Origin: Macrostomum lignano
Taxonomy: Eukaryota
DNA: 64,000 nt
NCBI GenBank assembly: GCA_002269645.1
Contig: NIVC01001484.1
Coordinates: forward strand, 111,531-175,530
Direction: 5' to 3'
The notes under the pieces were generated by a model. It saw only the letters and a program-made list of their open reading frames with translations. It was not told the origin of the DNA and made no database searches. Positions within the stretch are counted from its first letter, which is position 1, and each line of letters begins with the position of its first letter. Positions 12,591 through 48,000 of the stretch are shown piece after piece. The translations under genes were made by a program, and so were the position numbers.

Positions 12591-13189
12591 TGCGGCATGA
12601 GAACGAATGAAAATTAGTAATCAGCGAGGTAAGATACCAGATTATTCACTGGAAGGTGGGGCTTCGTTTGATCTTTCTGACTGAGCTTTGTTTTATGCTT
12701 TTGGCCTTGGTCTGTGCTTTAGCTAATCGTAAGCAAGACAAATTACTATAAAAAATCAAAAACAAAATAAAAAGTCTACTATTTGAATGATAAACTGGTT
12801 CGTAGGCAAAACTGTATTTTTATAGAAACATTGGAAGGAAACAGTTAAAAACTGGAATAACAGCGGCTCTGTGATAAAAAACAAGCGTAGGAAAGCGTTT
12901 CATGTGGTTAATAAAAAACGTTGCAAAATTGAAACATAAACTTCAAAAAAGGAAAGTCTAAACTCTTAAAAATAGAATTAAGACAAAATATTTTTGTATC
13001 TGGCAAACAAAAAGTTCAATCTGAAAAAAAATATAAATCTGATTAAAAAGTACATCCAATGTATCTAAGCAATGAAAGATTTTTCCTATTGATTCGATTT
13101 TTCGACCCGTTGTTTATATCTCACGCAAAACTATTATTTTTTGTGGTTGTCGCCCAATCTTTGCACCAAACTTGCAAAATAATAAAAAC

Positions 13190-15532: not shown

Positions 15533-15977
15533 GCCGCATGAACGGGTGAAACATTTGATTGAGAAAAATGCTGCCAATCTTGCCTTGAGCACAAAAATGA
15601 TAGCCTAGCAGGCCGATAACCGAAATTGATTATGAATGAAGAATAAAGTCTTAACGCAACTTTTTGATAAATTATAATTGGCAATCAATATTTATTGTAA
15701 ACTGTAGCAGTCTGTATCAAATACTGTCAGCAAAAAAAATAATTAAATACTGAACTGGATTAATCGCATAATTAAAAATGTAAAACTGACAGCCGCCTAT
15801 TGGCTTTTGAACACAATTTAAAAAACTTTGGGTAAAAAGCGAGAATAGCGCAATAGCCAGTTCCTCGCCATCTGATTAGTGATTGCACAAAGTGATTACT
15901 GAAATGCTAATATTATAAGACGTATTGCAATGGAATTAGCGGACATTGGTATTGCTAGCATATGTTATGCAGCAAAA

Positions 15978-17464
15978 TCAATCTGAATCTTCTTCATCAC
16001 TATCAACCAGCTGCTCATAGACCAGAGCCGACCGGTCAGCTTTGCCGGTTGCTGCGCTGCCACTGCAGCGACGCTGCGAGGCTCCGGTTGGTGCGCTGGA
16101 GCGACGCAGTCCGCCACGGTTGCTTAGCAACGGAGGCTGGGCAGCGGCGGCGGCCGTTTCAGACTGGCTTCGGTGCAGCAGCAGGTTGGGCCGCGCCGGA
16201 GCAGCTGACGACAGTCGACGCTGTGCGGCCTCCAGCCGTTGCGTCAGCTCGGCGATGCGCGCCTCCTGATCGCGGACGATCGACTGCAGCTCGGCGGCGA
16301 GTTTCGCCTCGCCAATCAGAACTTCGGTGGCTCGCTGAGAGGTCAGCCAGACGCCGCGGATGCTGACGTCGGCGGCGCAGTCGGCCTGGCAGACGGCGCA
16401 GCGCAGCTGCTGCTGCTCGGAGCTGTCGCTGAGCACCTCGTCGTTGGTGAAGGTGCAGTGCGGACAGTTCCACAGCAGCTGGTTGCGGTCCGGAAGATGC
16501 ACCTGGAGTAAAACAATTTGAAATTACAAAGAGTATCTTGACCAAGTTACATAAGTATTTGTTCGGTACGAAAACTCAAGGAGGTTTTGATGCCAAAGCT
16601 TAACAATCTTGTAATTGCCTTTGTGGCCAGTTAACCAGATGAAAGCGGTACCTAGGACAAGAAGCGTCTCAGAGACCCTGGCAACTGAGCCCCAAAGCTT
16701 ACCCTAGCAACTAAGCTACTCAGCCCCAAAGCTCACCCTAGCAACTAAGCTACTCAGCTCCAAAGATCACCCTAGCAACTAAGCTACTCAGCTCCAAAGC
16801 TCACCCTAGCAACTAAGCTACTCAGCCCCAAAGCTCACCCTAGCAACTAAGCTACTCAGCTCCAAAGCTCACCCTAGCAACTAAGCTACTCAGCCCCAAA
16901 GCTCACCCTAGCAACTAAGCTACTCAGCTCCAAAGATCACCCTAGCAACTAAGCTACTCAGCCCCAAAGCTCACCCTAGCAACTAAGCTACTCAGCCCCA
17001 AAGCTCACCCTAGCAACTAAGCTACTCAGCCCCAAAGCTCACCCTAGCAACTAAGCTACTCAGCCCCAAAGCTCACCCTAGCAACGAAGCTACTCAGCCC
17101 CAAAGCTCACCCTAGCAACTAAGCTACTCAGCTCCAAAGCTCACCCTAGCAACTAAGCTACTCAGCCCCAAAGCTCACCCTAGCAACTAAGCTACTCAGC
17201 TCCAAAGCTCAGGCTAGCAACTAAGCTACTCAGCTCCAAAGCTCACCCTAGCAACTAAGCTACTCAGCTCCAAAGCTCACCCTAGCAACTGAGCTACTCA
17301 TCCCCAAAGCTCACCCTAACGCAGTGCCCTCGCCTCCCAGCCTGGCCGTGCCAGTTCAGCTCGCAGTCGTCGCAGAACAGTTTCTCCCTACAGTTGATGT
17401 AGGCCTCTTCGCAAACGAACTCAGCCGGCTGATGACCGCAGATTGAGCACAGATTGGCTGACAT
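15978..17464 (-). CDS. HOIP-derived family B, copy 1: B-box + NZF + short coiled coil, ~224 aa
   Basis: Exon 1 17464-17315 (MSANLCSICGHQPAEFVCEE..KLFCDDCELNWHGQAGRRGHCVR; not in the ORF track), donor GTGAGC. Exon 2 16502-15978 after TTTTACTCCAG (VHLPDRNQLLWNCPHCTFTN..CAVC). Confidence 0.8.
16688..17320. repeat. 34-bp intronic minisatellite (GCTACTCAGCCCCAAAGCTCACCCTAGCAACTAA), ~18 units
   Basis: The array abuts and includes the exon-1 donor of family B copy 1. Confidence 0.96.
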
Positions 17465-19401: not shown

Positions 19402-19462
<61 letters not shown>

Positions 19463-19465
19463 CTA

Positions 19466-19505
<40 letters not shown>

Positions 19506-19509
19506 TGAA

Positions 19510-19552
<43 letters not shown>
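18380..19552. repeat. (GACA)n microsatellite, ~1.2 kb
   Basis: Directly visible; it produces the SVCL-type ORFs. Confidence 0.98.
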
Positions 19553-19670
19553 TTGATTGAATTTCAGCTATATTGAAGTCACCGCTGAAGGACACGCGCA
19601 TGCATAAAAATATTTCGCAATCAAATTAGGCTTCAATGTCTTCATAAAAAATCCCTTTTCTCTTCATCCT

Positions 19671-20732
19671 TTACTTGCGGACGCCGCGGCCAAAGTTGCC
19701 ATAGCAGATGCTGACTACGGGAGCGAACACCCCAGACAATCCGCCACTGCCGCCACCGCCGCCGCCAACACCGCCGCCGCTCCACATTGCCAGCCCGTGC
19801 GCGGCATCAAAATTGTTCGCCCGCCTGACCCGCCGGCTCGCCTCAGCAGGCAGATCGGCCTGCAGCTGGCCGCAGCTCCAAGGACTCTCCGCCAGCGCTG
19901 AATTGCCGCGGTCCAACAGAAACCGCCGAGGCAGCAAAGGCGAATTGGCCGACGCCGTCTCGGCCTCCCGACGCCGACGCTCTTCGACTTCGGCTTCGGC
20001 CTCTTTCAGCCGGCGTCGGAGACGTCGATCTCGCCGATGCTGGGCTCGTTCGCGCCGCTGCTCCGGCGTCTCGGCTGCTCGACGCTGCCTGGCGGCTTCG
20101 GCTTCGGTGGCCAGCTGGGCGCGAACTCCGGACCTCCAACGCTCGAAAGCGTCAACATCTCTGCTACTACTGTCAGTAGTTGTTGCAGACAGTGACGAGT
20201 GCCGTCTGTTGTGCCGGGCCAGACCGGCCAGGGAGCCGAACAGCCGCTGGGACCAGCTGGAACCGCGGCGGCTGCTGGCAGCTCTGGAAGATGAGGCAGT
20301 TTCAGCCGATTTTTCAGCCTCTCTACCTGCGGATTGTTCAGCCAGTTCGGTTGCGGCTACCGCAGCTTCAACAGAGCTCAGCTGGTGAGTCAGTTTCCGC
20401 AGCTGCTCAAGCTGCACCCGAGCCCGCCTCTGCAAGCAGGCCAACCTATGCCGCGGCTCAAGGCGGAGCTCTCCTTTGTTAGACGATGATGAGGCGCCGA
20501 AAACTCCTCGCGGCGAAACGCAGCTGGCAGCGGGGCAGCCGCACTGGCCGCACTCGAGCGAGGTCAGGCAGGAAGGAAACTCAGAGCTGGCCTGATGGAG
20601 CTTCTCAAGCTTAGCACAGTCAGCTTCACCACCTTTTGGTGCAGCTGTGGAGCACCAATGAAATCGAAGCTCGTTTCTAAGACTACAGCCGGCGCAGGTC
20701 CACGCAATCGAGCGAACGTCAAACAGCGACAT
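19671..20732 (-). CDS. HOIP-derived family C, copy 1: NZF-like finger + coiled coil + Arg/Ala-rich region, 353 aa
   Basis: Intact ORF with AG immediately before the ATG. WTCAGCSLRN..CGQC finger is followed by SPRGVF and LRKLTHQL, parallel to SIRGVW/RIAELTQRL in family B. ORF is preserved in both copies. Confidence 0.65.
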   Translation of the reverse strand: MSLFDVRSIAWTCAGCSLRNELRFHWCSTAAPKGGEADCAKLEKLHQASSEFPSCLTSLECGQCGCPAASCVSPRGVFGASSSSNKGELRLEPRHRLACLQRRARVQLEQLRKLTHQLSSVEAAVAATELAEQSAGREAEKSAETASSSRAASSRRGSSWSQRLFGSLAGLARHNRRHSSLSATTTDSSSRDVDAFERWRSGVRAQLATEAEAARQRRAAETPEQRRERAQHRRDRRLRRRLKEAEAEVEERRRREAETASANSPLLPRRFLLDRGNSALAESPWSCGQLQADLPAEASRRVRRANNFDAAHGLAMWSGGGVGGGGGGSGGLSGVFAPVVSICYGNFGRGVRK

Positions 20733-22027
20733 CTGGAATTATATGTTTGATAAGGTGCTGTGTGTTCAGCTGTATTGACCACTAGCTCACTGTGACTGCT
20801 TTGAGGGGTGACGCAAGCAGCCTTAGTCATTTAGACAAAAAACAACTCGTTTAAGTATGTCAGCAGTTACTCTTTCGATTAGAATTTTCTGGGTAACTTT
20901 TCAATTAAAAACTGCTGAATTGTCAAAGCGCACGGGGGAGTTGTAGAAATTCTGTGGCTCTTAGTGAGGAGTTGATGAGATGTCAAGGCTCAATCGGAAG
21001 TTGTTGGTAGGCCAAGCATCATAGGGGAGAAGGGTTTAAGTTAAGCCATGGCTTAAAGGGAGGTTTTGATGCCAAAGCTCACAGGGGATGCTAAAACACC
21101 ATTTTCCTCAAGAAACTAACAATAATGACTGTACAAGGTCAAAACCTTATACTTTAGTTTCTGCTTCCTCAATGGGAGGAGGGCGGATTGTTAGTTCTAT
21201 ATACTAAAAATAAAAACAAACACCAAAGCACTATTAGCACCATAGTGATAAAAAATAACGTTACAAAAGCGGTTCTATTTTGGTCTGAAAAAAAGAAAGT
21301 ACAAAATCAAAACTCCGTACTTGTACAAGTAGTACTATAGGACGAAGGCTTTTGCCGTTCCGGAATACACACGAACGTAAGTACATTTAGTCATAATGAA
21401 ACTACAAAAATAGCCATAACCATCAAACTAAAGTTTACACTGGAAAGATACTGACCATACAGACATAGCATTCGAGATACTGGAATATTGGACTACAATG
21501 GACAGTCAAATTGGGTGATGAATCTGAAACCAGCGGTTTTCTACTAACGCTTGACGTTAATATAAAACCAACAACGACATATTTAGTTCAAACTCAGAGT
21601 CCAAAATAGATTTTTCGGAATTGTTCTGAAGTTAAGTTTCATGGCAATTGAGTGGATAAAATTCATATATAAACATTGTAGGCAAAAAAATTAGAAAACC
21701 ATTAAGAACATCAGATGACTCCATACTTAAAAAAAAACTAATAAAAGAATATTAAAATAATTTATAATTTCTTCTTATCACATAGAGGACGAGGTTTGAA
21801 ATTTAGAGAAGTACCTCGAATAATTCGTATTATAGAGTAAAGTCTTCGCTATTTGGAAATGAAAAGTATATATGTTTTAGCAATTGGTCCAAAATATAGC
21901 CGATACTTTTAAGGATACGGTCGACAATTTATCGAGTACACTTAGCACGAGCAAGCAATACTCAATCTTATCTTTGTGCACCTATATACCATCGCTTTGC
22001 ACCGATCAGCGCATGCATAATAAAAAC

Positions 22028-25000
22028 TCAGTAGGGTCTCGGAAGATGCAAAACAGTTCCACAGTTGCGACACATAACATTCGATGAGTCTCTTTGCAAA
22101 TATGTATCCCCATTGCGACGACATTTCGGGCAGTACACGAGCTGAATCTGTGCACTCCCAGGTCGGCTCACAGAGCACCGCTTTGGAGAAGGGGCTACTT
22201 CTGGAAGACTGTCAAGTTCTTTGCACTTTCTGCCTGTATGCACATCTTCCCAAAGCCGGCCGCACATCTTGCAAGTGCGCTTGTAGCAAGTAAAGCACTG
22301 AAAACCAACAGGTTCGATAGGGCCCGTAATGGCTCTGTACTTGCCGCAGTGAGCGCATTGCAGTTTCGTCTCAGCCTTTTGAGCTTTCATTCTGCCAGTA
22401 ACTCGAGTAGACGATTTTTTTGGCTCATCAAACTCATCAGATTCATCAGACGTATTTACTTTGTGAAGGTCATTTACTGATGTTTCAGGACCATATATCC
22501 CATAAAGCAACTTTTCAGCAGCATCAACAGGCTCAGAATCCTCAACTCGCCAAGATGAAACTGTTGCCGATGATCCAGCACGGGATGGAAGTGAGCTCGC
22601 ATCGGCCCCAAACTGCAGACCGCTGGCATGAGTAACCGCTGCCATCTGCCAAGTCGTATAATCTGCCCTTCTCTGCCTCGCTTCGTCACCTTGATATCTT
22701 CTGGGATTTTCATCCAGCGGCACCTGTTTACCTCTTTGCAGCCTCGTCTTTCTGATCAGCTGCAGGTCATTCTGCATGGCTTCAGCCGCTTGCTCTTGGC
22801 GCAGCCGCTCTTCCTCTGCCCTTTCCCATCGCCCCACTGCTGCCGACGCGTTCCGCAGAGAGTGGTTTCTTTGTTGTCGCTCAGCCTCTTCTCTCTCCCA
22901 CAGTCGCTGCGCCTCTTCTCTCTCCTTTCTCCACCGCTCAGCCTCTTCTCTCTGCTGTCTTAACCGGTCAGCCTCTTTTCTCTCCTTTCTCAACCGCTCA
23001 GCCTCTTCTCTCTCCTTTCTCAACCGCTCAGCCTCTTCTCTCTCCTTTCTCAACCGCTCAGTATCTTCTCTCTCCTTTCTCAACCGCTCAGTATCTTCTC
23101 TCTCCTTTCTCAACCGCTCAGCCTCTTCTCTCTCCTTTCTCAACCGCTCAGCCTCTTCTCTCTCCTTTCTCAACCGCTCAGCCTCATCTCTCTCCTTTCT
23201 CAACCGCTCAGCCTCTTCTCTCTCCTTTCTCAACCGCTCAGCCTCTTCTCTCTCCTTTCTCAACCGCTCAGTATCTTCTCTCTCCTTTCTCAACCGCTCA
23301 GCCTCTTCTCTCTCCTTTCTCAACCGCTCAGCCTCTTCTCTCTCCTTTCTCCACCGCTCAGCCTCTTCTCTCTGCTGTCTTAACCGGTCAGCCTCTTCTC
23401 TCTCCTTTCTCAACCGCTCAGCCTCTTCTCTCTCCTTTCTCAACCGCTCAGCCTCTTCTCTCTCCTTTCTCAACCGCTCAGTATCTTCTCTCTCCTTTCT
23501 CAACCGCTCAGTATCTTCTCTCTCCTTTCTCAACCGCTCAGCCTCTTCTCTCTCCTTTCTCAACCGCTCAGCCTCTTCTCTCTCCTTTCTCAACCGCTCA
23601 GCCTCTTCTCTCTCCTTTCTCAACCGCTCAGCCTCTTCTCTCTCCTTTCTCAACCGCTCAGCCTCTTCTCTCTCCTTTCTCAACCGCTCAGTATCTTCTC
23701 TCTCCTTTCTCAACCGCTCAGCCTCTTCTCTCTCCTTTCTCAACCGCTCAGCCTCTTCTCTCTCCTTTCTCAACCGCTCAGCCTCTTCTCTCTCCTTTCT
23801 CAACCGCTCAGTATCTTCTCTCTCCTTTCTCAACCGCTCAGCCTCTTCTCTCTCCTTTCTCAACCGCTCAGCCTCTTCTCTCTTCCACAGTCGCTGCGCC
23901 TCTTCTGTCTCCTTTCTCAACCGCTCAGCCTCTTCCTTCTCTTTTTTCTTTCGTTCCGCCTCTTCTCTTCTCTTCCGTCGTAACATTTCTTCAGCTTCCC
24001 TCTGCCTCCTGTTCTCATCCTCGATTCTCGCTTGCCTTTCGAGTTCTTCTTTTTTTTCTCTTTCCAACCGTTGAAGCTCCAACATTGCCAGCTCCAGCTG
24101 CTGCCTTTCCGTGGCCTCCTTTTTGAAACGCCTCTCTGTACGAAGTCTCTGCTCCTGCTCTTCTTTTAGCCGCGTCTGCAGCTCCTGTATTAGCTGCTCT
24201 CTTTCCTGCAGCTGAGCCTGAGTTAACTGTCTTTTTTCTGCCTCCTGGACTGCCAGCAATTCAGCCAGTTGTACCTGCAACTCCTTTTCCTCCAGCTGCT
24301 GCTGATAGAGTGGATACTCAGCATCTTCAAGCTGTTTGGACTCTGTAGCGGTGCCGGCCGGTACCATGTCGGACCTCGAAGACGCTCGCGTCTCTCTACT
24401 TGGAGAATTTGCCGAGGCTTCCGCTGCTGCGACACGATTTTCCAATCGCTCAGCCGCTTTTGTCTCTATTTTATTTCGTTCTGCCTCTTCTGTTCTCTTC
24501 CGCTGTCGCATTTCTTCAGCTTCCCTCTGCCTCCTGTTCTCATCCTTGATTCTCGCTTGTCTTTCGAGTTCTTCTCTTTTTTCTCTTTCCAGCCGCTGCC
24601 TTTCCGTGGCCTCTTTCTCGAAACGCCTCTCTGTACGAAGTCTCTGCTCCTGCTCTTCTCTTAGCCGCCTCTGCAGCTCCTGTATTTGCTGCTCTCTTTC
24701 CTGCAGCTGAACGTGCAGTTCTCTGCTTTGAACCACAGATGTTTGTAACTCAGCCTCCTGAGCCTCGAGCTGCAGCTTTAACTGGCCAAGCTGATCAGTC
24801 AGCTCAGCAATTCTCACTGAGTCCTGTCTGATCTGATCCGCTACTCTGTCAGAGCACACGATGCCGTCAACGTGGAAAAACTCTGCGCTCTCGGTCTCGC
24901 ACACTAAGCACACCAAGTACTGCGAATCCGAGTTGGTCAAAACATGCTGGTTTTCCGAAAATAGGCAGTGCCTGCACGTCCAGGACACGATAGCAGCGCC

Positions 25001-25628: not shown

Positions 25629-27591
25629 TTAATTTGAATCTTCTTCATCACTATCAACCAGCTGCTCGTAGACCAGAGCCGACCGGTCAGCTTTGCCGGT
25701 TGCTGCGCTGCCACTGCAGCGACGCTGCGAGGCTCCGGTTGGTGCGCTGGAGCGACGCAGTCCGCCACGGTTGCTTAGCAACGGAGGCTGGGCAGCGGCG
25801 GCGGCCGTTTCAGACTGGCTTCGGTGCAGCAGCAGGTTGGGCCGCGCCGGAGCAGCTGACGACAGTCGACGCTGTGCGGCCTCCAGCCGTTGCGTCAGCT
25901 CGGCGATGCGCACCTCCTGATCGCGGACGATCGACTGCAGCTCGTCGGCGAGTTTCGCCTCGCCAATCAGAGCTTCGGTGGCTCGCTGAGAGGTCAGCCA
26001 GACGCCGCGGATGCTGACGTCGGCGGCGCAGTCGGCCTGGCAGACGGCGCAGCGCAGCTGCTGCTGCTTGGAGCTGTCGCTGAGCACCTCGTCGTTGGTG
26101 AAGGTGCAGTGCGGACAGTTCCACAGCAGCTGGTTGCGGTCCGGAAGATGCACCTGGAGTTAAACAATTTGAAATTACAAAGAGTGTCTTGACCAAGTTA
26201 CATGAGTATTTGTTCGGTACGAAAACTCAAGGGGGTTTTGATGCCAAAGCTTAACAATCTTGTAATTGCCTTTGTGGCCAGTTAACCAGATGAAAACGGT
26301 ACCTAGGACAAGAAGCGTCCCAGAGTCCCTGGCAACTGAGCCCCAAAGCTCCCCCTAGCAACTAAGCTACTCAGCCCCAAAACTCACCCTAACAACTGAG
26401 CTACTCAGCCCTAAAGCTTACCCTAGCAACTAAGCTACTCAGCCCCAAAGCTCACCCTAGCAACTGAGCTACTCAGCCCCAAAGCTCACCCTAGCAACTA
26501 AGCTACTCATCCCCAGAGCTCACCCTAACAACTGAGCTACTCATCCCCAGAGCTCACCCTAGCAAATAAGCTACTCAGCCCCAAAGCTCACCCTAGCAAC
26601 TAAGCTACTCAGCCCCAAAGCTCACCCTAGCAACTAAGCTACTCAGCTCCAAAGCTCACCCTAGCAACTAAGCTACTCAGCCCCAAAGCTCACCCTAGCA
26701 ACTAAGCTACTCATCCCCAAAGCTCACCCTAGCAACTGAGCTACTCATCCCCAAAGCTCACCCTAGCAACTGAGCTACTCATCCCCAAAGCTCACCCTAG
26801 CAACTGAGCTACTCATCCCCAAAGCTCACCCTAGCAACTAAGCTACTCATCCCCAAAGCTCACCCTAGCAACTGAGCTACTCATCCCCAAAGCTCACCCT
26901 AGCAACTGAGCTACTCATCCCCAAAGCTCACCCTAGCAACTGAGCTACTCATCCCCAAAGCTCACCCTAGCAACTGAGCTACTCATCCCCAAAGCTCACC
27001 CTAGCAACTGAGCTACTCATCCCCAAAGCTCACCCTAGCAACTGAGCTACTCATCCCCAAAGCTCACCCTAGCAACTGAGCTACTCATTCCCAAAGCTAA
27101 CCCTAGCAACTGAGCTACTCAGCCCCAAAGCTCACCCTAGCAACTAAGCTACTCATCCCCAAAGCTCACCCTAGCAACTAAGCTACTCAGCTCCAAAGCT
27201 CACCCTAGCAACTGAGCTACTCATCCCCAAAGCTCACCCTAGCAACTGAGCTACTCAGCCCCAAAGCTCACCCTAGCAACTAAGCTACTCAGCCCCAAAG
27301 CTCACCCTAGCAACTAAGCTACTCATCCCCAAAGCTCACCCTAGCAACTAAGCTACTCAGCTCCAAAGCTCACCCTAGCAACTAAGCTACTCAGCTCCAA
27401 ATCTCACCCTAGCAACTAAGCTACTCAGCCCAAAAGCTCACCCTAACGCAGTGCCCTCGCCTCCCAGCCTGTCCGTGCCAGTTTAGCTCGCAGTCGTCAC
27501 AGAACAATTTCTCCCTACAGTTGTTGTCGGCCTCTTCGCAAACGAACTCAGCCGGCTGATGACCGCAGATTGAGCACAGATTGGCTGACAT
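25629..27591 (-). CDS. HOIP-derived family B, copy 2: B-box + NZF + coiled coil
   Basis: Exon 1 27591-27442 (MSANLCSICGHQ..NWHGQAGRRGHCVR), exon 2 26153-25629; near-identical to copy 1. Confidence 0.8.
26330..27447. repeat. 34-bp intronic minisatellite, ~33 units (same family as 16688-17320)
   Basis: Same unit, longer array. Confidence 0.96.
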
Positions 27592-30100: not shown

Positions 30101-30172
30101 TTACTTGCGGCCGCCGCGGCCACAGTTGCCATAGCAGATGCTGACCACGGGAGCGAACACCCCGGACAAACC

Positions 30173-30214
<42 letters not shown>

Positions 30215-31165
30215 CCACATTGCCAGCCCGTGCGCGGCATCGAAATTGTTCGCCCGCCTGACCCGCCGGCTCTCCTCAGCAGGCAGGGCGGCCCGCAGCT
30301 GGCCGCAGCTCCACGGACTCTCCGCCAGCGCTGAATTGCCGCGGTCCAACAGAAACCGCCGAGGCAGCAAAGGCGAATTGGCCGACGCCGTCTCGGCCTC
30401 CCGACGCCGACGCTCTTCGACTTCGGCTTCGGCCTCCTTCAGCCGGCGTCGGAGACGTCGATCTCGCCGACGCTGGGCTCGTTTGCGCCGCTGCTCCGGC
30501 GTCTCGGCTGCTCGACGCTGCCTGGCGGCTTCGGCTTCGGTGGCCAGCTGGGCGCGAACTCCGGACCTCCAACGCTCGAAAGCGTCAAGATCTCTGCTAC
30601 TACTGTCAGTAGTTGTTGCAGACAGTGACGAGTGCCGTCTGTTGTGCCGGGCCAGACCGGCCAGGGAGCCGAACAGCCGCTCGGACCAGCTGGAACCGCG
30701 GCGGCTGCTGGCAGCTCTGGAAGATGAGGCAGTTTCAGCCAATTTTTCAGCCTCTCTACCTGCAGCTTGATCAGCCAGTTCGGTTGCGGCTACCGCAGCT
30801 TCAACAGAGCTCAGCTGGTGAGTCAGTTTCCGCAGCTGCTCAAGCTGCACCCGAGCCCGCCTCTGTAGGCAGGCCAACCTATGCCACGGCTCAAGGCGGA
30901 GCTCTCCTTTGTTAGACGATGATGAGGCGCCGAAAACTCCTCGCGGCGAAACGCAGCTGGCAGCGGGGCAGCCGCACTGGCCGCACTCGAGCGAGGTCAG
31001 GCAGGAAGGAAACTCAGAGCTGGCCTGATGGAGCTTCTCAAGCTTAGCACATTCAGCTTCACCACCTTTTGGTGCAGCTGTGGAGCACCAATGAAATCGA
31101 AGCTCGTTTCTAAGACTACAGCCGGCGCAGGTCCACGCAATCGAGCGAGCATCAAACAGCGACAT
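30101..31165 (-). CDS. HOIP-derived family C, copy 2, 354 aa
   Basis: Near-identical to 19671-20732; the poly-Gly (GCC)n tract differs. Confidence 0.65.
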
Positions 31166-32494: not shown

Positions 32495-34900
32495 TCAGTA
32501 GGCTCGGGGAAGATGCAATACAGTTCCACAGTTGCGACAAATAACATTTGATGAGTCTCTTTGCAACTTTGTATCCACAGTGACACGACATCTCGTGCAT
32601 TGCATGAGCTCCATCTGTGCACTCACAGGTCGGCTACCAGTCCCAGAGCCACGCTTTGGAGAAGGGGCTACTCCTGGAAGACTGTTAAGTTCTTTGCACT
32701 TTCTTCCAGTATGTACATCTTCCCAAGGCCGGCCGCACATCTTGCAAGTGTATTTGTTGCATGAAAAACATACAAATCCAACAGGTTCGATACGGCCTGT
32801 AATGTCTCTGTACTTGCCGCAGTGAGCACATTGGAGTTTTGCTATGCATTGGGATTGCATCCCAACCTTCTGAGATTTTCTTCTGCCAGCAACTCGAGTA
32901 GACAACCTTATTGGCTCATCAAACTCATCAGATTCATCGGAAGTAATTGCCTTCCCAATGTCATCTACCAATGTTTCAGGTCCACGAACTCCATTGCGCA
33001 ACTTTTCGGCAATATCAACAGGCTCAAAAGCCCCAACTCGCCTCGCTGAAACTGTTGTCGATGATCCAGCACGGGATGAAAATGAGCTCGCATGGGTCCC
33101 AAACTGCAGACCACTGGCATGAGTAACCGCTGCCATCTGCCAGGTCGGATCATCTGCCCTTCTCTGTCTCGCTTCGTCACCTTGATATCTTCTGGGATTT
33201 TTATCCAGCGGCGTCTGTTCGCGTCTATGCAGCCTTGTCTTTCTGATTAGATGCAGATCATTCTGCATGGCTTCAGCCTCTTGCTCTTGGCGCAGCCGCT
33301 CTTCCTCTGCCCTTTCCCATCGCCCTACTGCTGCCGACGCGTTCCGCAGAGAGTGGTTTCTTCGTTGTCGCTCAGCCTCCTCTCTCTCCCACAGTCGCTG
33401 CGCCTCTTCTGTCTCCTTTCTCAACCGCTCAGCCTCTTCTCTCTCCTTTCTCCACCGATCAGCCTCTTCTCTTTGCTGTCTCAACCGCTCAGCTTCTTCT
33501 TTCTCCTTTCTCAACCGCTCAGCCTCTTCTCTCTCCTTTCTCAACCGCTCAGTTTCTTCTCTCTCCTTTCTCAACCGCTCAGCCTCTTCTCTCTGCTGTC
33601 TCAACCGCTCAGCCTCTTCCCTCTCTTTTTTCTTTCGTTCCGCCTCTTCTCTCTTCCGTTGTCGCATTTCTTCAGCTTCTCTCTGCCTCCTCTTATCATC
33701 CTCAATTCTCGCTTGCCTTTCGAGTTCTTCTCTATTTTCTCTTTCCAACCGCTGCAGCTCCAACATTGCCAGCTCCAGCTGCTGCCTTTCCGTGGCCTCC
33801 TTTTTGAAACGTCTCTCTGTACGAAGTCTCCGTTCCTGCTCTTCTTTTAGCCGCGTCTGCAGCTCCTGTATTTGCTGCTCTCTTTCCTGCAGCTGAACCT
33901 GAGTTAACTGCCTTTTTTCTGCCTCCTCGACTGCCAGCAGTTCAGCCAGTTGTACTTGCAATTCCTTTTCCTCAAGCTGCTGATAGAGTGGATACTCAGC
34001 ATCTTCAAGCTGTTTGGACTCTGTAGCGATGTCGGCCGGTACCACATCGGACCTCGAAGACGTCCGCGTCTCTTTTCTTGGAGAATTTGCCAAGGTTTCC
34101 ACAGCTGCAACACGATTTTCAGACGGCGGCAGAGTTCGCTGGCGCTTTTGTTCTACGCGGTCTTCCACCGCTGAAGCATGCGCCTGTTTTCTATGAGATT
34201 CGCTGTTTGATTGGCTGGGCGGCTGCTGATCTCCCTGATTCGAACGCCCAGCATTCTGTCTGCCAATTGCAGCTTGAGCTTGAAACTGCCTCTGCCTTTC
34301 TTGAGGACTCAAGTCACTCAACCCAACACTATTCTCCGCATTAGGCGAAGCAGCTGCTGGATTTTCACGCTTTTTCGAAGGCGATGGCAGCTGAGAGTTG
34401 CACATTTCGCATTGTTTTGCTCCCTTCGCAGTATTGACAAAGGTGCAAGTAGGACAAGCAATCTCCGTGCTTGGTGATGACTTTTTAGTCGATTTCTTAG
34501 TCTTGGTTGTATTGCTGTTGCTGGTCTGAGCTGGTGCAGCTTCTCTCAATTCCCTGCCAACGCTGGTCTTGCTGCACACTTCGCACATCAACCGATCTTC
34601 TGGCTTCCATTGAACTGCGCTGACATTTTGAAATGTGCAGTGCGGACACGACCAAGGATAACCTTGCTGCTGCGGTTGCGTCAACGGCTGGTCACTGCGG
34701 CCGTTTTCTCGCAATAAAGCATCAACCTCCTGCCGCTGATGACTGCGTCTGCTCGGGTGGCCGTGCCAGATCTCGTCGCAGTTGACGCACAGCTGCTTGC
34801 GCGCGCAGGCCGGAGCTGTGCAGACGCGAGCGACAGGCTCGTCGCCGCAGAATTTGCACATTTCAACCTCGCCGATGCCAGCAGCTGCGCTTGTTGCCAT
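32495..34900 (-). CDS. HOIP-derived family A, copy 3 (intronless): B-box, 2 NZF, ER-K rod, IBR, degenerate half-RING2, 801 aa
   Basis: MCKFCGDEP..LCVNCDEIWHGHPSRRSH (HOIP-type B-box); WSCPHCTFQN and CPTCTFVN..CEMC (NZF); C-terminus as in copies 1 and 2. Confidence 0.85.
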   Translation of the reverse strand: MATSAAAGIGEVEMCKFCGDEPVARVCTAPACARKQLCVNCDEIWHGHPSRRSHQRQEVDALLRENGRSDQPLTQPQQQGYPWSCPHCTFQNVSAVQWKPEDRLMCEVCSKTSVGRELREAAPAQTSNSNTTKTKKSTKKSSPSTEIACPTCTFVNTAKGAKQCEMCNSQLPSPSKKRENPAAASPNAENSVGLSDLSPQERQRQFQAQAAIGRQNAGRSNQGDQQPPSQSNSESHRKQAHASAVEDRVEQKRQRTLPPSENRVAAVETLANSPRKETRTSSRSDVVPADIATESKQLEDAEYPLYQQLEEKELQVQLAELLAVEEAEKRQLTQVQLQEREQQIQELQTRLKEEQERRLRTERRFKKEATERQQLELAMLELQRLERENREELERQARIEDDKRRQREAEEMRQRKREEAERKKKEREEAERLRQQREEAERLRKEREETERLRKEREEAERLRKEKEEAERLRQQREEADRWRKEREEAERLRKETEEAQRLWEREEAERQRRNHSLRNASAAVGRWERAEEERLRQEQEAEAMQNDLHLIRKTRLHRREQTPLDKNPRRYQGDEARQRRADDPTWQMAAVTHASGLQFGTHASSFSSRAGSSTTVSARRVGAFEPVDIAEKLRNGVRGPETLVDDIGKAITSDESDEFDEPIRLSTRVAGRRKSQKVGMQSQCIAKLQCAHCGKYRDITGRIEPVGFVCFSCNKYTCKMCGRPWEDVHTGRKCKELNSLPGVAPSPKRGSGTGSRPVSAQMELMQCTRCRVTVDTKLQRDSSNVICRNCGTVLHLPRAY

Positions 34901-36483: not shown

Positions 36484-38582
36484 CTACCCGTCGGAAAAAA
36501 GGCTTTTAAAGAAATTCTTCATATATCGACCCCTTTTAACCCAGTTTATTTTAAAGGCCGATAACGACGAACATACGTTTTCCATAACGATATTGTTCTC
36601 ATTGATCAAGTCCAACAGGTACTCCTTGTAGTGCCGCTCACAGACGCAAACCTTCTTGTAGACTCGATTTTCGCACTGTAGAAAGCCACCGCTACCGGAA
36701 CCTCCATGTTTAAAGTCGATCGCTGAGCATCGCCACTCCTCATCAACGATCTTTCTTCCGCCCCTTTCGGATGAGCTTTTGTTCCGTCTGCGCCTGGCGG
36801 TCTTGTCGAAAGGAATTTTAGACTCTTTCAGTATAAACTGTAGCACGGAAATGCTGACATTCTTAGACTTAAAGAAGCACTGCTTCTCATGGCTAGACAG
36901 CATTATAGAACTTGCGGTGTTGCAGCAAGGACAGAATGAATGCTTGCAGCTGTAGCATGCAATATGATCCGCGGTGGATTTCGAACTCGGAAAAAAACAT
37001 TGGCATTCTGGACAGTAAAATCCTTTCGCGTTTAGCCTTTCATAAGCTGGTTGAGTGGAAGACAGCGTGTCAGAAAATTTACTTATCTTTATAGACAACT
37101 CACGGCAGCATTCGTCTGAAGTTCTTTCAAATTCAGTAATCACAGCTTCACTAACCCAGCTGCAAGTCTCTCCGATCTGCTCAAGCTGCAAGCTCAGAAA
37201 GTTTATGTGAGTAGCAAAGTGCTCCACATCGTCTGGCTTGGGCTGCTGACAGCCAGGACAAGAAAATCGACTCGGGCTGATGTTGGTAGCAGGGTTGAGG
37301 CACTCAAATACAAACTTTCTAAAGCAATCAAAGCACAGTTGACACGAGCACTGAGCCATGCACACTTGGTAGTGACGAGGCTCGGGTTTTTCACATTTCT
37401 GGCATTTGCTGCACAGGTAGGCAAGCATGAACTCGTCTTCGTAAGCGAGATCACCGCCAGACTGAACAGCTTTCACCAAATCGTCTAGCCGAAATCTACA
37501 GAACTTTGGATCCTGGACAAGTCTTAGCAAAAGCTCCTTCTCTGTATCAAGAGCTTTCATGTTGCGAATCTGTTGGAATGTTTCCTGTCTCAGACGATGC
37601 TGGACCTGTGGTTCCTCGCGTACGGCCTGCAGTGGTGGATTATCTGTAGCTGAATCGGGTGAAGGTTCGTGTTTTTGGTCACGAGACTGCTCGTACGAGG
37701 TTTTTGGAGCAGAGCTTAAACTGCTAGATTGGGTCTGTTGTTGCTGCGCATATTGTGGTTGAAGGACATCTTGATTAACTGACTGTCCGTTGGCTTCATG
37801 TTGCCTTGAATAGTTTGTCTGAGACTGCTGCTGTGACATCGGATCAAATCCATTCGAATCTCTCACAGTAGTTGAAGAATACACTGGGCGCTTGTTCTCC
37901 CTTGCCAGTGCGCTGTCCACAGACTGCGGTTGTTTTAAAACAACATCAGGCTGCTGGCATTGCTGCGGAGCTTGAACTGGACGCTGGCTATCAAAAGACA
38001 TTGGCGCCTTCTGAGTAGCAACAGCTCGACGATCAGTTGTTTTGTAACAGACTTCGCAAAGTAGGTGTTGAGTCGAGTCAATAGCTTGTCTCGCAGAACT
38101 GTTCATAAAAGTACAGTGCTCGCACTGCCACTCCACACCACCGCCAATAGCAGCCGGAGCCTCAGCAGCGGTTTGCGCTCGTGCTGCAAGGGTGTCATAT
38201 TGAGCGCCACTGGAGGTTCGCTGCATGGTTGAAGATTGACGTTCCTGCGGCAAACAGGACTTGTGCCGCTGGATAGAACTTTCAGAAGTCTTGGCCCTGT
38301 GCTGGATAATCCGTGTTTGCGGAGGCATGTTATAATGCGAGCTATTTTTGTCATCGTTAACGTCATGAACTCGATGATCTTTCCTATTCGGATGGCCGTG
38401 CCACAGTACGCTGCAGTCTTTGCACAGGCGATTGCGACTGCAGCTGGGCTCTGAGCAGATCCGCTGCACAGGATTGTCGCCGCAGAAGCTGCACATCTCA
38501 ACCTCACGGAGATTTGGCTGCTGGTGCGGCTGCATTGAGGCTGCAGCCGCTTGACTCTGAGCGGACAGACTGTAAGCCATGC
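36484..38582 (-). CDS. HOIP/RNF31 paralog, predicted pseudo-ligase: B-box, NZF, RING1, no IBR, RING2 with Cys->Ala, LDD (intronless)
   Basis: B-box CSFCGDNP..WHGHPNR; NZF WQCEHCTFMN; RING1 PRHYQVCMAQCSCQLCFDCF..CPGC; RING2-like CPEC-x10-ADHIACYSC..FCPCC..HEKQC; LDD CERHYKEYLLDLIN. The ORF-track start at 38625 lies in an upstream repeat; the real start (38582 or later) is uncertain. Confidence 0.85.
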
Positions 38583-38627
38583 ACAGATGAGAGACAAAAA
38601 TTATCTGCCAGGTGAAATGTCCCATTC

Positions 38628-45080: not shown

Positions 45081-48000
45081 TTAGAGCGGGCACTGAGCCA
45101 GGATCGCTTTTTTCAGTTCCGCCACGTTGACCTCTTCTGACCCCAAGGCCACCTGGAGACCGTGCCGCCTACACACGGCCACGAGCTCGTCAGACGTCAT
45201 GATCTCAACCGGATCCAGCCGGTTCCTATTGATAAGCGTCACCAGGTACTCTGAGTAGTGCTTGTCGCACAGGTTGGCCCGGCCGGGGTGCACCCGCCTG
45301 CTGCAGGCCTCATCAACCAGGCCGTCGGCTGTCTCCTTCTGCTCCATCACTTTGCACTCGTCGAACTCTTCGTCGTCGGGTACGAAAGAGCGAAATTCGA
45401 CTTTGTGCATGCGAAGCAGCTGCTGTAGCCTGCGAGGCCGATGCGAGTAAACAGGATCGTATAGACTGATTTCTAGTACTGACTACTCATATAAGTAGTC
45501 TAGTTCCAGATTCATGAGTGCTATATAACTCAGTGCATTGCTACAGTTCACCCAGCTGTAAAACGGGTGCCAGCATTAGCTGGGGTAATTGAGGGTGTAT
45601 GGCGACTGAACAGCCGTACGCAGCCTTCAGATGCGCCGCGCAACAATAGCTGCGGCTGAGCTGTCGGTTGCACACCTGGCCCAATTGGGGCCATATAAAC
45701 ATACAATAGATACAATAGGAATTTTTCTCACCTGTCAATATCGAAATCTCTCAGATGGTAGAGGCAGCTACGCGGATGACGGCACGCCAGGCCCTGGCTG
45801 TCCGTATGCTGGAACAGATTGCCGCAGCCCGAGCAGAAATTCGCCCGGCACATTCGGCACACAAAGTGCAGGCAGCCGCCGCCAGCCAAGGCGTACTTGA
45901 AGTGGCAGGCCGGGCACTCGATGCCGTGCTGCTGCAGGTAGAAGGCGACGCCTCTGGTCTGGAACTCCGGATCATTCTCCTGCTTCCAGCGTTCGAAGTC
46001 TTCGCAGCTGAGTCCTTTGTGCTGCTTCTCCCACGGCTTGCGGCACTCCCTGCAGGTGTCCCGGCGGCACCGGGGACAGGTGAACCGGTTCTGGCCGGCC
46101 TCGGCATCCAGCTCGAAGCCGGTGCCGCAGTGGCTGCACCAGACGAAGTCGGGGTTGCGCATCGTCTGCCAGTCGAACAGGCGGTCCTGGGTTGTTCAAG
46201 TGCGGGTTGTGGGTTTCATGTTGAAAATAAATGCACACTACTCGCTACTTAGTAGTACTATAAGCAGTAGCGTTTAGTTTTTCCTGAACATTATTTCGCT
46301 TTTGATCTGTCATCTTCTGCTACTCTGGTTTACTAGTAGCTACTTCTGATTTACTAGTGGCTACTTCTGATTTACTAGCAGCTACTTCTGATTTACTAGT
46401 AGCTATTTTTGATTTACTAGTAGCTACTTCTGATTTACTAGTAGCTATATCTGATTTACTGGTAGCTACTTCTGATTTACTAGTAGCTACTTCTGATTTA
46501 CTAGTAGCTACTTCTGATTTACTAGTAGCTACTTATGATTTACTAGTAGCTACTTCTGATTTACTAGTAGCTACTTCTGATTTACTAGCAGCTACTTCTG
46601 ATTTACTAGTAGCTACTTCTGATTTACTAGTAGCTACTTCTGATTTACTAGTAGCTACTTCTGATTTACTAGTAGCTACTTCTGATTTACTAGTAGCTAC
46701 TCTGATTTACTAGTGGCTACTTCTGATTTACTAGCAGCTACTTCTGATTTACTAGTAGCTATTTTTGATTTACTAGTAGCTACTTCTGATTTACTAGTAG
46801 CTACTTCTGGTTTACTAGTAGCTATTTTTGATTTACTAGTAGCTACTTCTGATTTACTAGTAGCTATATCTGATTTACTGGTAGCTACTTCTGATTTACT
46901 AGTAGCTACTTCTGATTTACTAGTAGCTACTTATGATTTACTAGTAGCTACTTCTGATTTACTAGTAGCTACTTCTGGTTTACTAGTAGCTATATCTGAT
47001 TTACTAGTAGCTACTTCTGATTTACTAGCAACTCTTTAATTAGCAAACTCACCTGCAGACGGTTTACATCATCCGGTTCGAATCGCAAAGCCGGATGCTG
47101 GAAGTGAGCAATCTGAGCCAGCATGTGCTGAAAGTGCAACTGCAATGCCTCAACATCGTTAGCCTTGGGATAGCGGCACACCGGGCAGTTCAGGTGAGTC
47201 ACGTGCATGTCCTTCATATTGGTAGTGACGAAGCCATAGAAGCACTCCTGGCACAGCTCGCAGCCGCAGTTCACCATGGCCAGGAATTGGTGCCGCGGAT
47301 ACTTCTCGGTGCAGATCGGGCACTGCTTGTTCATGTAGCTGCTGACTTCTTCCAGCCAATTCTCCTCATCCAGCATACAGTCTGTGGCCTTAACAGCTTC
47401 CACCAGATCCTCCAACTGATGGTGGCCGAAGTCTTCGTGATTGTGCAGCTTAGTGAGGCGCCTGGCGATGGACTCGCTGCGCAGTCCGTGATCCACCATG
47501 AGGGTGTGCAGCGAGAACTGGCTGCCGTCGAATGCGACGCAAGCAGCAGCGTCCGCATCGGGGCCGTCGCCGGCCAGTGACAGGTCGCCAAGGTAACTGT
47601 CCAGCACTAATCCGTTGAGCTGGTCGAGTGCCTTTTCAAGACTGCCATCGGCTCTGGCCACGGCTGCGTGATGATCGCGGCAGCTCAGGTTCGGGTAGAG
47701 CTGCGCCAACTCCTGCACCGCGCGTTCGCGGCGCCTGGAGCATTGGTCCAGCACCACCGGCAGGCAGTCGGCCTCGGACAGGTGCGGACAGTCGGCCATG
47801 GCTTCGGACACTTCGTGTTGCGAGAAAGCCAGCTCTTCCAGCGCATGCGGCTTCAGGTCCGGCCGATTGGCGAGGTAGCGACGCGTGGCTTCCAAGCGGA
47901 CGCGATCGACTCGGCGGGGCCACTCCTGGCGAACCCAGTCGATCAGTTTGGCATCCGGAATGTCCCGGTCGCCAGCCGCGGCCAAGGCGGCGATAATCAC

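What the first reader, a model, noticed from the sequence alone, without database searches (positions are those of the whole stretch)
36484..38582. Natural 'C885A' pseudo-HOIP with the IBR excised
Seen: CPEC-QCFFPSSKSTAD-HIACYSCKHSFCPCC aligns without gaps to CPAC-HFKYALAGGGCL-HFVCRMCRANFCSGC of the neighbouring HOIP. The catalytic Cys codon (45872-45874) corresponds to GCG/Ala (36970-36972). The downstream HEKQCFFKSKNV..LQFIL matches HPRSCLYHLRDF..LQQLL, so the acceptor-ubiquitin LRD motif has become SKN. RING1 runs into RING2 with no IBR. Zn ligands and a ~700-codon open frame are retained. Established: human HOIP C885A is catalytically dead, and R935/D936 position the acceptor ubiquitin. 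Inference: a selected pseudo-enzyme that could still bind E2~Ub through RING1 and act as a dominant negative or scaffold.
Basis: partly seen in the sequence, partly recalled or inferred. Interest (0 to 1): 0.8.

Follow-up and report, generated by a model that had tools for sequence, protein, structure and literature searches.

The report
Catalytically dead HOIP paralogue in flatworm
The flatworm Macrostomum lignano keeps an intact copy of the linear-ubiquitin ligase HOIP, annotated from RNA data, that has lost its active-site cysteine and its middle zinc domain. It most likely acts as a non-enzymatic partner or regulator rather than as a ligase.

Summary
The window is Macrostomum lignano (Mlig_3_7). 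ORF 36484..38625 (minus strand, 713 codons, one exon) encodes a HOIP-like protein: ZF, NZF-like finger, UBA-like helices, RING1, a 78-residue linker, a RING2-type finger and an LDD.

- **Active site:** Ala552 (GCG 36970-36972) sits where all 20 bona fide HOIPs compared have the catalytic Cys. LRD is SKN.
- **IBR:** none is detectable. The linker scores no better than shuffles against a HOIP IBR model.
- **Finger identity:** it scores 15.7 bits against a RING2 model and 7.4 against an IBR model.
- **Zn ligands:** all RING1, RING2 and LDD ligands are kept.

It is not a recent copy of the neighbouring HOIP (about 24% identity). It is not a decaying pseudogene either. A second copy in the genome keeps the Ala and lacks the IBR, with dN/dS 0.45 (p = 0.005) and only in-frame indels. 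The gene model is RNA-based. A deep paralogue at another HOIP cluster also lacks the Cys and groups with it.

The RING1 residue that forms the E2 pocket (human V701) is Lys here. I read it as a selected RBR pseudoligase, and its function is inferred. This is a new variant of a known kind, of moderate interest.

The parts
36484..38625 (-). Whole ORF of the pseudo-HOIP gene ('B'): 713 codons from the first ATG, single exon, TAG stop at 36484-36486. The database gene model (P0001, 697 aa) starts at codon 17. Met16 (38578-38580) is a likely start.
38374..38493 (-). N-terminal B-box-like zinc finger (aa 45-84), homologous to the ZF of HOIP and of neighbouring gene A.
   Evidence: Direct comparison of the translations. 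No Pfam model matches it.
38047..38130 (-). NZF-like finger (aa 166-193, WQCEHCTFMN...CEVC). It has the TF dipeptide and the same long insert as NZF1 of the neighbouring HOIP.
   Evidence: Sequence comparison. Pfam does not call it in B.
37597..38013 (-). Q/S-rich low-complexity spacer (aa 205-343). It occupies the place of NZF2 and the UBA pair of HOIP.
   Evidence: no UBA_HOIP hit in B. This spacer probably swamped the first homology search.
37414..37542 (-). UBA-like helical region immediately before RING1 (aa 362-404).
   Evidence: Aligns with the pre-RING1 region of HOIPs. AlphaFold pLDDT 86-92 with helices.
37249..37404 (-). RING1 (aa 408-459) with 8/8 Zn ligands. Lys410 (37396-37398) replaces the E2-pocket residue equivalent to human V701.
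   Evidence: The model matches solved HOIP RING1 (7v8f_B) with TM 0.67 and rmsd 1.7 A. The role of V701 is from PMC8944867.
37015..37248 (-). 78-residue linker (aa 460-537) where the RING1-IBR helix, the IBR and the IBR-RING2 helix should be. No detectable IBR.
   Evidence: IBR HMM -1.3 bits, no better than shuffles; pLDDT about 30; HOIP positions 92-191 unmatched
36877..37014 (-). RING2/Rcat-type finger (aa 538-583) with 8/8 Zn ligands. Ala552 (36970-36972) sits at the catalytic Cys position and His554 (36964-36966) is kept. An extra Cys543 (36997-36999) is shared only with paralogue P0002.
36574..36876 (-). LDD-like domain (aa 584-684). SKN (36859-36867) replaces the acceptor-ubiquitin motif LRD. 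The LDD zinc ligands and the HYKEYL helix are kept. The C-terminal helices are shorter than in true HOIPs.
   Evidence: Pfam PF18091 at 27 bits against a cut-off of 23. Also. Foldseek top 18 hits are all HOIP RING2-LDD, but the model is weak.

Best explanation
This is a protein-coding, transcribed paralogue of the RBR ligase HOIP/RNF31 in Macrostomum lignano that selection has kept as a pseudoligase.

**Shown**
- The zinc scaffolds of RING1, RING2 and the LDD are intact.
- Several parts needed for the RING-HECT-hybrid reaction have changed. The E2-pocket residue is Lys (human V701). The IBR and its flanking helices are missing. The thioester Cys is Ala (human C885). The acceptor-ubiquitin pair R935/D936 is K/N.
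- It belongs to an old lineage of Cys-less HOIP paralogues within a large expansion of the HOIP family in M. lignano.

**Inferred**
- It cannot carry ubiquitin on the canonical site and cannot make linear chains.
- It acts without catalysis, as an adaptor, ubiquitin binder or regulator. It would do so through its ZF, NZF-like finger, UBA-like region and the remodelled RING1 / RING2-LDD surfaces.
- It possibly modulates the active HOIPs encoded beside it. Inactive TRIM paralogues regulate active TRIM ligases in a comparable way.
For: - **Identity and architecture:**
- **Catalytic residues:** in 20 bona fide HOIPs, C885, H887, R935 and D936 are invariant and position 701 is I/V/L/M/T/A. B has A, H, K, N and K.
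- **Finger is RING2, not IBR; linker has no IBR signal:**
- **Selection:**
  - 713-codon ORF.
  - All non-IBR Zn ligands kept at about 24% identity to HOIP.
  - The second genomic copy (P0026 / PAA73089.1) is 96% identical in protein and keeps the Ala and the IBR loss.
  - In the diverged 3' half, dS = 0.093 and dN = 0.042, so dN/dS = 0.45. There are 19.9 synonymous and 37.1 non-synonymous differences. Fisher p = 0.005.
  - Both CDS indels are in-frame.
  - Identity falls from 94.7% to 73-80% just past the stop codon.
- **Expression (indirect):** the GenBank annotation of Mlig_3_7 derives only from RNA-seq and transcript assemblies (PMC5730564), and both copies carry gene models.
- **Old lineage:**
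  - P0002 has Tyr at the Cys position, Val at H887, LKQ for LRD and Arg at position 701.
  - It groups with B at 100% bootstrap.
  - It shares 15 residues with B that occur in none of the 20 true HOIPs. Other pairings share 0-4.
- **Analogy:** TRIM pseudoligases and the TRIM49/TRIM51 pair (PMC11992055).
Against: - No biochemical data exist, so loss of activity is inferred from residues only.
- The selection test rests on two copies in one genome and 57 substitutions. dN/dS of 0.45 indicates only moderate constraint.
- The 5' 954 nt are 100% identical between the copies (gene conversion or assembly), so they carry no information.
- Transcript evidence is indirect, because reads may come from either copy. 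The gene was not found in three sets of published supplementary tables.
- No orthologue from another species could be retrieved. Two of the three homology searches failed to return even the query itself.
- The clade of B with P0002 could be inflated by long-branch attraction.
- The AlphaFold models of the RING2-LDD part are of low confidence: pLDDT 57-59, TM 0.3-0.35 to HOIP.
- His887, and Lys at the R935 position, are retained. Some ubiquitin-handling function therefore cannot be excluded.
Confidence: 0.62

Rival explanations
1. One reading: an E2~Ub trap or dominant negative. RING1 still binds charged E2. With no Cys to receive ubiquitin, the protein would sequester E2~Ub away from active HOIPs.
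For: RING1 keeps 8/8 Zn ligands and the conserved Pro of the CPxC knuckle. It is modelled with high confidence and superposes on solved HOIP RING1 from its UBE2L3 complex at rmsd 1.7 A.
Against: - The human V701 equivalent helps form the pocket for UBE2L3 F63 (PMC8944867). It is Lys in B and Arg in P0002, but I/V/L/M/T/A in all 20 true HOIPs.
- I732 is Glu and W704 is Lys in B, although these two positions also vary among true HOIPs.
- The IBR and the RING1-IBR helix are absent. From my own knowledge of the 5EDV transfer complex, these help hold the donor ubiquitin of E2~Ub.
Confidence: 0.15
2. A neutral relic: a duplicated HOIP gene that is decaying and has kept its frame by chance or through recent gene conversion.
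For: - Catalytic and binding residues and a whole domain are lost.
- The C-terminal tail differs strongly between the two copies.
- dN/dS of 0.45 is not low.
- The locus sits among minisatellites and many HOIP-derived duplicates.
Against: - At about 24% identity to HOIP, a 713-codon frame and every non-IBR Zn ligand are retained.
- Synonymous changes are in excess, p = 0.005.
- Only in-frame indels occur in the CDS, while the 3' flank is 73-80% identical with many indels.
- An RNA-based gene model exists.
- A deeply diverged sister paralogue is also intact.
Confidence: 0.08
3. Still an enzyme. Ubiquitin would be passed through a different nucleophile, or RING1 would act as a canonical RING E3. 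One candidate nucleophile is the Cys just after the first CxxC of RING2. This is Cys543 in B and the third Cys of CPNCSLC in P0002, and no true HOIP has a Cys there.
For: - The extra Cys is shared by B, its second copy and P0002, and by none of the 20 true HOIPs.
- His at the H887 position is kept in B.
Against: - The position of this Cys relative to the active-site pocket could not be assessed. The model is of low confidence and no coordinates were available.
- P0002 lacks the His.
- The acceptor-site residues are changed, the E2-pocket residue is changed and the IBR is absent.
Confidence: 0.07
4. Artefact: a sequencing or assembly error creates the Ala codon or the missing IBR.
For: The long-read assembly shows a likely 1-nt indel in the neighbouring HOIP.
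Against: The Ala codon, the IBR-less linker and the open frame are all present on two independent contigs that differ at 5% of positions in this region.
Confidence: 0.01

Closest known systems
HOIP / RNF31 (LUBEL in arthropods), catalytic subunit of LUBAC
   Same: Same domain order: ZF, NZF-like finger, UBA-like region, RING1, RING2-type finger, LDD. The LDD passes the Pfam threshold. The best sequence and fold matches in PDB are all HOIP.
   Different: - No PUB domain, second NZF or UBA pair.
- No IBR.
- C885 is Ala, R935/D936 are Lys/Asn, and V701 is Lys.
- The LDD C-terminus is shorter.
- Only about 24% identity to the true HOIPs of the same genome.
Engineered HOIP C885A/C885S catalytic-dead mutants
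   Same: The same position lacks the thiol. In human HOIP this Cys carries the thioester (PMC7246992).
   Different: The laboratory mutants keep the IBR, the E2-binding RING1 and the acceptor site. Here all of these are altered as well, so the behaviour of C885A (for example E2~Ub binding) cannot simply be transferred.
IBR / BRcat domain of RBR ligases (Spratt, Walden and Shaw 2014, PMC3940038)
   Same: A BRcat is an Rcat-fold zinc domain without a catalytic Cys. The finger here is functionally that.
   Different: By descent it is the RING2/Rcat: 15.7 against 7.4 bits, and it runs directly into the LDD. The review states that RING1, BRcat and Rcat are always found together and in that order. 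This protein, as RING1-Rcat*, breaks that rule. So do the neighbouring proteins that carry only an IBR-like finger.
RING pseudoligases of the TRIM family (PMC11992055)
   Same: Paralogues of active E3s that keep the zinc fold but have diverged at the E2~Ub interface. At least one inactive paralogue, TRIM51, regulates its active relative TRIM49.
   Different: Those are canonical RING E3s with no catalytic Cys to lose. Here the loss is in an RBR (thioester-forming) ligase and includes a whole domain.
P0002 (PAA78395.1, BOX15_Mlig011956g1), M. lignano paralogue at a second HOIP cluster
   Same: No catalytic Cys (Tyr), Lys at R935, a basic residue at position 701, an extra Cys after the first RING2 CxxC, and the SKS and HSFCPxC motifs. 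It groups with B at 100% bootstrap.
   Different: It keeps an IBR (17 bits against the HOIP IBR HMM), has two UBA-like+RING1 units and a long Q/E-rich coiled coil, and lacks the His887 equivalent. It is only about 28-30% identical to B.

Membership tests
[quoted passage not shown] | RING1 with eight Zn ligands | tested here: met
   8/8 ligand columns conserved. The model matches solved HOIP RING1 with TM 0.67 and rmsd 1.7 A.
[quoted passage not shown] | IBR/BRcat domain between RING1 and RING2 | tested here: not met
   No Pfam IBR hit. The linker scores -1.3 bits against the HOIP IBR HMM, no better than shuffles. At most 3 of 8 ligands could remain. pLDDT is about 30.
[quoted passage not shown] | RING2/Rcat zinc domain | tested here: met
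   8/8 ligand columns. 15.7 bits against the HOIP RING2 HMM, with 0 of 500 shuffles reaching that score. phmmer aligns it to human RING2. Pfam IBR_1 does not call it.
[quoted passage not shown] | Catalytic Cys in RING2 that forms the ubiquitin thioester | tested here: not met
   Ala552 (GCG 36970-36972) at the column that is Cys in 20 of 20 true HOIPs and in human C885.
HOIP / RNF31 subfamily | C-terminal LDD (Pfam PF18091) | tested here: met
   27 bits against a cut-off of 23, aa 595-679. The LDD Zn ligand columns are invariant in the alignment. The fold match to HOIP RING2-LDD is weak, TM 0.3-0.35 on a low-confidence model.
HOIP / RNF31 subfamily | Acceptor-ubiquitin residues R935/D936 and catalytic-site residue H887 | tested here: not met
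   R935 is Lys and D936 is Asn, while H887 is retained. The role of these residues is from PMC7246992.
HOIP / RNF31 subfamily | N-terminal PUB domain, two NZFs and the UBA pair that binds HOIL-1L/SHARPIN | tested here: not met
   No PUB-like ORF lies between 38625 and the next gene; that interval holds only tandem repeats. There is no UBA_HOIP hit in B, whereas the neighbouring HOIP has one. One NZF-like finger is seen by eye only.
HOIP / RNF31 subfamily | Synthesis of Met1-linked ubiquitin chains | not testable with these tools
   Needs an in vitro ubiquitination assay.
Pseudoenzyme (pseudoligase) | Clear homologue of an active enzyme that lacks essential catalytic residues | tested here: met
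Pseudoenzyme (pseudoligase) | Maintained by selection and expressed (that is, not a pseudogene) | tested here: met
   dN/dS 0.45 with p = 0.005, in-frame indels only, and a drop in identity after the stop codon. The gene model is RNA-based. This rests on two copies in one genome, and no cross-species test was possible.
Pseudoenzyme (pseudoligase) | Demonstrated lack of catalytic activity together with a non-catalytic function | not testable with these tools
   Needs biochemistry and genetics.
Processed pseudogene / retrocopy of the neighbouring HOIP | Intronless near-copy of the parent mRNA, decaying | tested here: not met
   B is intronless where the neighbour has two introns, but it is only about 24% identical to it. 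It is under constraint. Several apparently active HOIP-family ORFs in this genome are also single uninterrupted ORFs.

The most novel reading that the evidence does not exclude
Macrostomum has evolved a conserved clade of catalytically dead HOIP paralogues. B is RING1-Rcat*-LDD without a BRcat, and P0002 still has one. These proteins would work as non-enzymatic readers or regulators of an expanded linear-ubiquitin system, for instance by binding ubiquitin chains or pairing with the active HOIPs encoded beside them. They would be the first natural RBR pseudoligases, and a natural exception to the rule that RING1, BRcat and Rcat always occur together. A still bolder version is that the clade-specific extra Cys next to the first RING2 zinc knuckle is a relocated nucleophile.
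Probability: 0.35. Interest if true: 0.65.

Novelty: new variant of a known kind. Interest (0 to 1): 0.5.

Why it matters
RBR ligases are defined by a RING1-IBR-RING2 triad and a thioester-forming Cys. A standard review states that the three domains are always found together (PMC3940038). My literature searches found no described natural Cys-less RBR.

A selected paralogue has lost the Cys, the IBR, the E2-pocket residue and the acceptor-site residues, yet keeps every zinc scaffold. That would show that the HOIP fold can be reused for a non-catalytic job. It would also be a natural counterpart to the C885A/S mutants used in LUBAC research.

M. lignano supports transgenesis (PMC5730564), and I know RNAi to be established in this species. 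The role of such a pseudoligase can therefore be tested directly, including whether it regulates the neighbouring active HOIPs. The surrounding expansion of HOIP-derived genes suggests unusual elaboration of linear-ubiquitin signalling in this regenerative flatworm.

Tried and rejected
1. **Full-length homology search.** It returned only the query's own cluster. The Q-rich spacer probably filled the candidate list.
2. **Two further searches with the C-terminal 373 aa and with an alignment of both copies.** Neither returned anything, not even the query itself. I therefore could not test whether the Ala and the IBR loss are conserved in other Macrostomum species.
3. **Exhaustive representative search.** It found the paralogue P0002 and true HOIPs. 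Two high-ranking hits, P0003 and P0004, are long tandem-repeat proteins and spurious.
4. **Vestigial IBR in the linker.** MAFFT alignments suggested this (CSW.. under WCSHC, DECCRE under DTCREC). I rejected it because the linker scores no better than shuffles against the IBR HMM.
5. **Recent copy or retrocopy of the neighbouring HOIP.** Rejected on about 24% identity and on the tree.
6. **AlphaFold2 of aa 377-713 and of aa 523-713.** RING1 and the UBA-like part are confident. RING2-LDD stays at pLDDT of about 57, so the Foldseek matches to HOIP RING2-LDD (TM 0.3-0.35) are only consistent, not decisive. A fold comparison cannot separate IBR from RING2 in any case, because they share a fold (PMC3940038).
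7. **Expression data.** I looked for Mlig019305 and Mlig011956 in full texts and in the supplements of three M. lignano papers and found nothing.
Full report
**Source and setting.** The protein encoded by ORF 36484..38625 is found exactly on contig NIVC01001484.1 of assembly GCA_002269645.1. That assembly is Macrostomum lignano Mlig_3_7, and cluster members carry names such as BOX15_Mlig019305g1. All genes discussed lie on the minus strand. The neighbourhood runs as follows:
- a bona fide HOIP, with exons 48411..47053, 46186..45732 and 45429..45081, 720 aa, plus an upstream PUB/ZF ORF;
- a 5.2-kb minisatellite of 20-bp units;
- the gene in question, here called B;
- gene A (32495..34900), a HOIP-derived protein with ZF, two NZFs, a coiled coil and an IBR-like finger.

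**Checking the observation.**
- The ORF is 713 codons in a single exon. The chance of such a frame at this base composition is about 1e-16.
- The codon at 36970-36972 is GCG (Ala552). The neighbour's codon at 45872-45874 is TGC, the Cys of GGGC.
- phmmer against PDB chains places the Ala opposite human HOIP C885. It aligns the finger with RING2 (+14.1 bits, continuing into the LDD) and not with the IBR (-2.6 bits).
- I built separate HMMs of the IBR and RING2 fingers from 20 bona fide HOIPs. The finger scores 15.7 bits on RING2 and 7.4 on IBR, and both exceed all 500 shuffles.
- Pfam calls the LDD (PF18091) at aa 595-679, 27 bits against a cut-off of 23.
- In a table of functional columns, all 20 true HOIPs have C885, H887, R935 and D936. 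B has A, H, K and N. The importance of Cys885, Arg935 and Asp936 is as summarised in PMC7246992.

**The IBR.**
- B has 78 residues between the last Cys of RING1 and the first Cys of RING2. The neighbour has 131.
- With the neighbour as phmmer query, its positions 92-191 find no counterpart in B.
- MAFFT scatters the linker under the IBR columns and suggests vestiges. The linker nevertheless scores -1.3 bits against the IBR HMM, and 465 of 500 shuffles do as well or better.
- AlphaFold predicts no structure there, with pLDDT of about 30.
- The IBR is therefore absent. The gaps are multiple rather than one clean excision.
- All Zn ligands outside the IBR are kept: RING1 8/8 and RING2 8/8, and the four LDD ligand columns are invariant in the alignment.

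**Not a recent copy of the neighbour.** B is 23-25% identical to the window HOIP and to a second M. lignano HOIP (P0005). Those two are 47% identical to each other. The exhaustive representative search found one closer relative, P0002 (PAA78395.1), at E = 4e-29. P0002 lies in a second HOIP cluster on contig NIVC01000691.1. Its features:
- two UBA-like+RING1 units, an NZF, an IBR (17 bits), a RING2-type finger and an LDD (Pfam E = 1.7e-9);
- Tyr at the C885 column, Val at H887 and LKQ for LRD.

In an NJ tree B and P0002 group at 100% bootstrap and the two true M. lignano HOIPs at 99.5%. Long branches could inflate that. However, B and P0002 also share 15 residues found in none of the 20 true HOIPs, against 0-4 for other pairings. 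These include SKS before the lost Cys, HSFCPxC, Lys at R935, a basic residue at 701 and an extra Cys after the first RING2 CxxC. The simplest reading is an old Cys-less lineage. P0002 kept the IBR and B later lost it.

**Gene or relic?** A second copy of B (P0026, PAA73089.1) lies on contig NIVC01001037.1, in a region collinear with the window.
- It is 96% identical in protein, keeps Ala (STANHIAC) and lacks the IBR.
- The first 954 nt are 100% identical, from gene conversion or very recent coalescence.
- The remaining 1.1 kb differ at about 5%. There are 19.9 synonymous and 37.1 non-synonymous differences, giving dS 0.093, dN 0.042 and dN/dS 0.45. Fisher p = 0.005.
- Both indels are in-frame.
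- Just past the stop codon identity falls to 73-80% with many indels.
- At about 24% identity to HOIP, every non-IBR Zn ligand is kept.
- The GenBank annotation of this assembly was made only from RNA-seq-guided and de novo transcript assemblies (PMC5730564), and both copies carry such models.

Together this argues for a transcribed gene under moderate purifying selection. The caveats are that only two copies from one genome were compared, the transcript evidence is indirect, and there are no cross-species data.

**How it probably works.** The canonical HOIP cycle is as follows (PMC7246992). RING1 binds E2~Ub. Ubiquitin passes to C885. The LDD presents the acceptor ubiquitin through R935/D936. 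In B the thioester site is gone and the acceptor pair is changed, though semi-conservatively (K/N). The IBR with its flanking helices is missing, and a RING1 residue of the E2 pocket is charged. In the UBE2L3/HOIP RING1 crystal structure, V701, C725, I732 and P745 form the pocket for UBE2L3 F63 (PMC8944867). Position 701 is I/V/L/M/T/A in all 20 true HOIPs but Lys in B and Arg in P0002. From my own knowledge, this loop-1 hydrophobic residue is the classic E2-binding determinant of RING domains.

Several elements of the reaction have therefore changed while the zinc scaffolds persist. That pattern fits a pseudoligase reused for binding or scaffolding better than an E2~Ub trap. Candidate interaction modules are the ZF, the NZF-like finger with its TF dipeptide, the UBA-like helices (pLDDT about 90) and the remodelled RING2-LDD. 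B lacks the PUB domain and the UBA pair. It would therefore not be expected to dock OTULIN/p97-type or HOIL-1L/SHARPIN-type partners the way HOIP does. That last point follows from established knowledge of HOIP and is inference here. Regulation of an active ligase by an inactive paralogue has precedent in TRIM49/TRIM51 (PMC11992055).

**Comparison with what is known.** Spratt, Walden and Shaw (PMC3940038) define the BRcat as an Rcat-fold domain without the catalytic Cys. They state that RING1, BRcat and Rcat are always found together and in that order. B is RING1-Rcat*-LDD with no BRcat, and its Rcat has become 'benign'. The neighbouring A/E/F proteins carry an IBR-like finger without RING1. 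Literature searches for natural Cys-less RBR or HOIP paralogues found none. I file B as a divergent, catalytically dead member of the HOIP lineage. It fails the defining catalytic features of the RBR family, so it is not a typical RBR ligase.

**Structure predictions.** The model of aa 377-713 is confident for the UBA-like part and RING1. That part matches solved HOIP RING1 (7v8f_B) with TM 0.67 and rmsd 1.7 A. The RING2-LDD part, also modelled alone, stays at pLDDT of about 57. Its top 18 Foldseek hits are all HOIP RING2-LDD or RBR chains, but at TM 0.3-0.35. This is consistent but weak.

**Verdict.** Novelty is a new variant of a known kind. Interest is moderate (0.5). It would rise if orthologues across Macrostomum confirm conservation, or if a regulatory interaction with active HOIPs is shown.

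Noticed in passing
window ~48604-48605 (minus strand), junction of ORFs 48438..50723 and 47011..48582: Relative to the homeologous contig, the window's true HOIP has a 1-nt deletion. On that contig (L003) one ORF of more than 1013 aa runs from the PUB/ZF part into NZF-UBA-RING1. The deletion splits the window gene into two frames. It is either a long-read assembly indel or a real frameshift in this copy.
   Followed up: partly
window 32495..34900 (gene A), 13190..15274, 22028..24988 (all minus strand): A family of HOIP-derived proteins. Each has NZF finger(s), a long REEAERLRKE-type coiled coil, a complete IBR-like finger (22 bits against the HOIP IBR HMM; 8 ligands) and a terminal CxxC..CxxC finger, but no RING1. 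Gene A also has a B-box ZF like B's. The IBR therefore occurs here without RING1 or RING2, another exception to the 'triad always together' rule.
   Followed up: partly
L002 (contig NIVC01000691.1) 913..4890, 9962..13306, 15226..17229, 19444..21045, 22695..: A second HOIP cluster.
- A small NZF+RBR-LDD unit (RGGCLH, FRD) fused through a Q/E-rich repeat to a full HOIP.
- The Cys-less P0002.
- Another NZF+RBR-LDD+NZF ORF.
- The HOIP P0005.
- A gene whose B-box ZF is 70% identical to B's, cut by the end of the locus.

M. lignano has a large expansion of the HOIP family, and the four ORFs listed here are each a single uninterrupted frame.
   Followed up: partly
window 39700-44901, 46319-47028, 38603-39018: Three tandem arrays: a 5.2-kb array of 259 copies of a 20-bp unit between HOIP and B, a 21-bp array inside HOIP intron 1, and a 32-bp array abutting B's 5' end. 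The first ATG of the ORF lies inside the 32-bp array. The arrays hold the same positions on the homeologous contig.
   Followed up: partly
window 37624-38577 and 45081-46318 compared with L003: Patches of 99.7-100% identity lie inside homeologous regions that are otherwise 73-96% identical. The patches are B's 5' 954 nt and HOIP exons 2-3 together with intron 2. Because an intron is included, this looks like gene conversion or very recent coalescence rather than selection.
   Followed up: partly
window 36997-36999 (Cys543) and the equivalent position in P0002: An extra Cys one to two residues after the first CxxC of the RING2-type finger is shared by B, its second copy and P0002. It is absent from all 20 true HOIPs. 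Its meaning is unknown: a Zn-site change, a relocated nucleophile or coincidence.
   Followed up: no
window 11661..12590 (minus strand): A single-exon RagA/Gtr1-type GTPase (Pfam Gtr1_RagA, E = 2.5e-98) at the edge of the HOIP-derived cluster.
   Followed up: no
window 19671..20732 and 30101..31165; 15978..16502 and 25629..26153 (minus strand): Two further pairs of near-identical ORFs, some beginning with NZF-like W-x-C-x2-C fingers. With the E/F genes they form a segmental duplication of about 9-10 kb inside the window.
   Followed up: no
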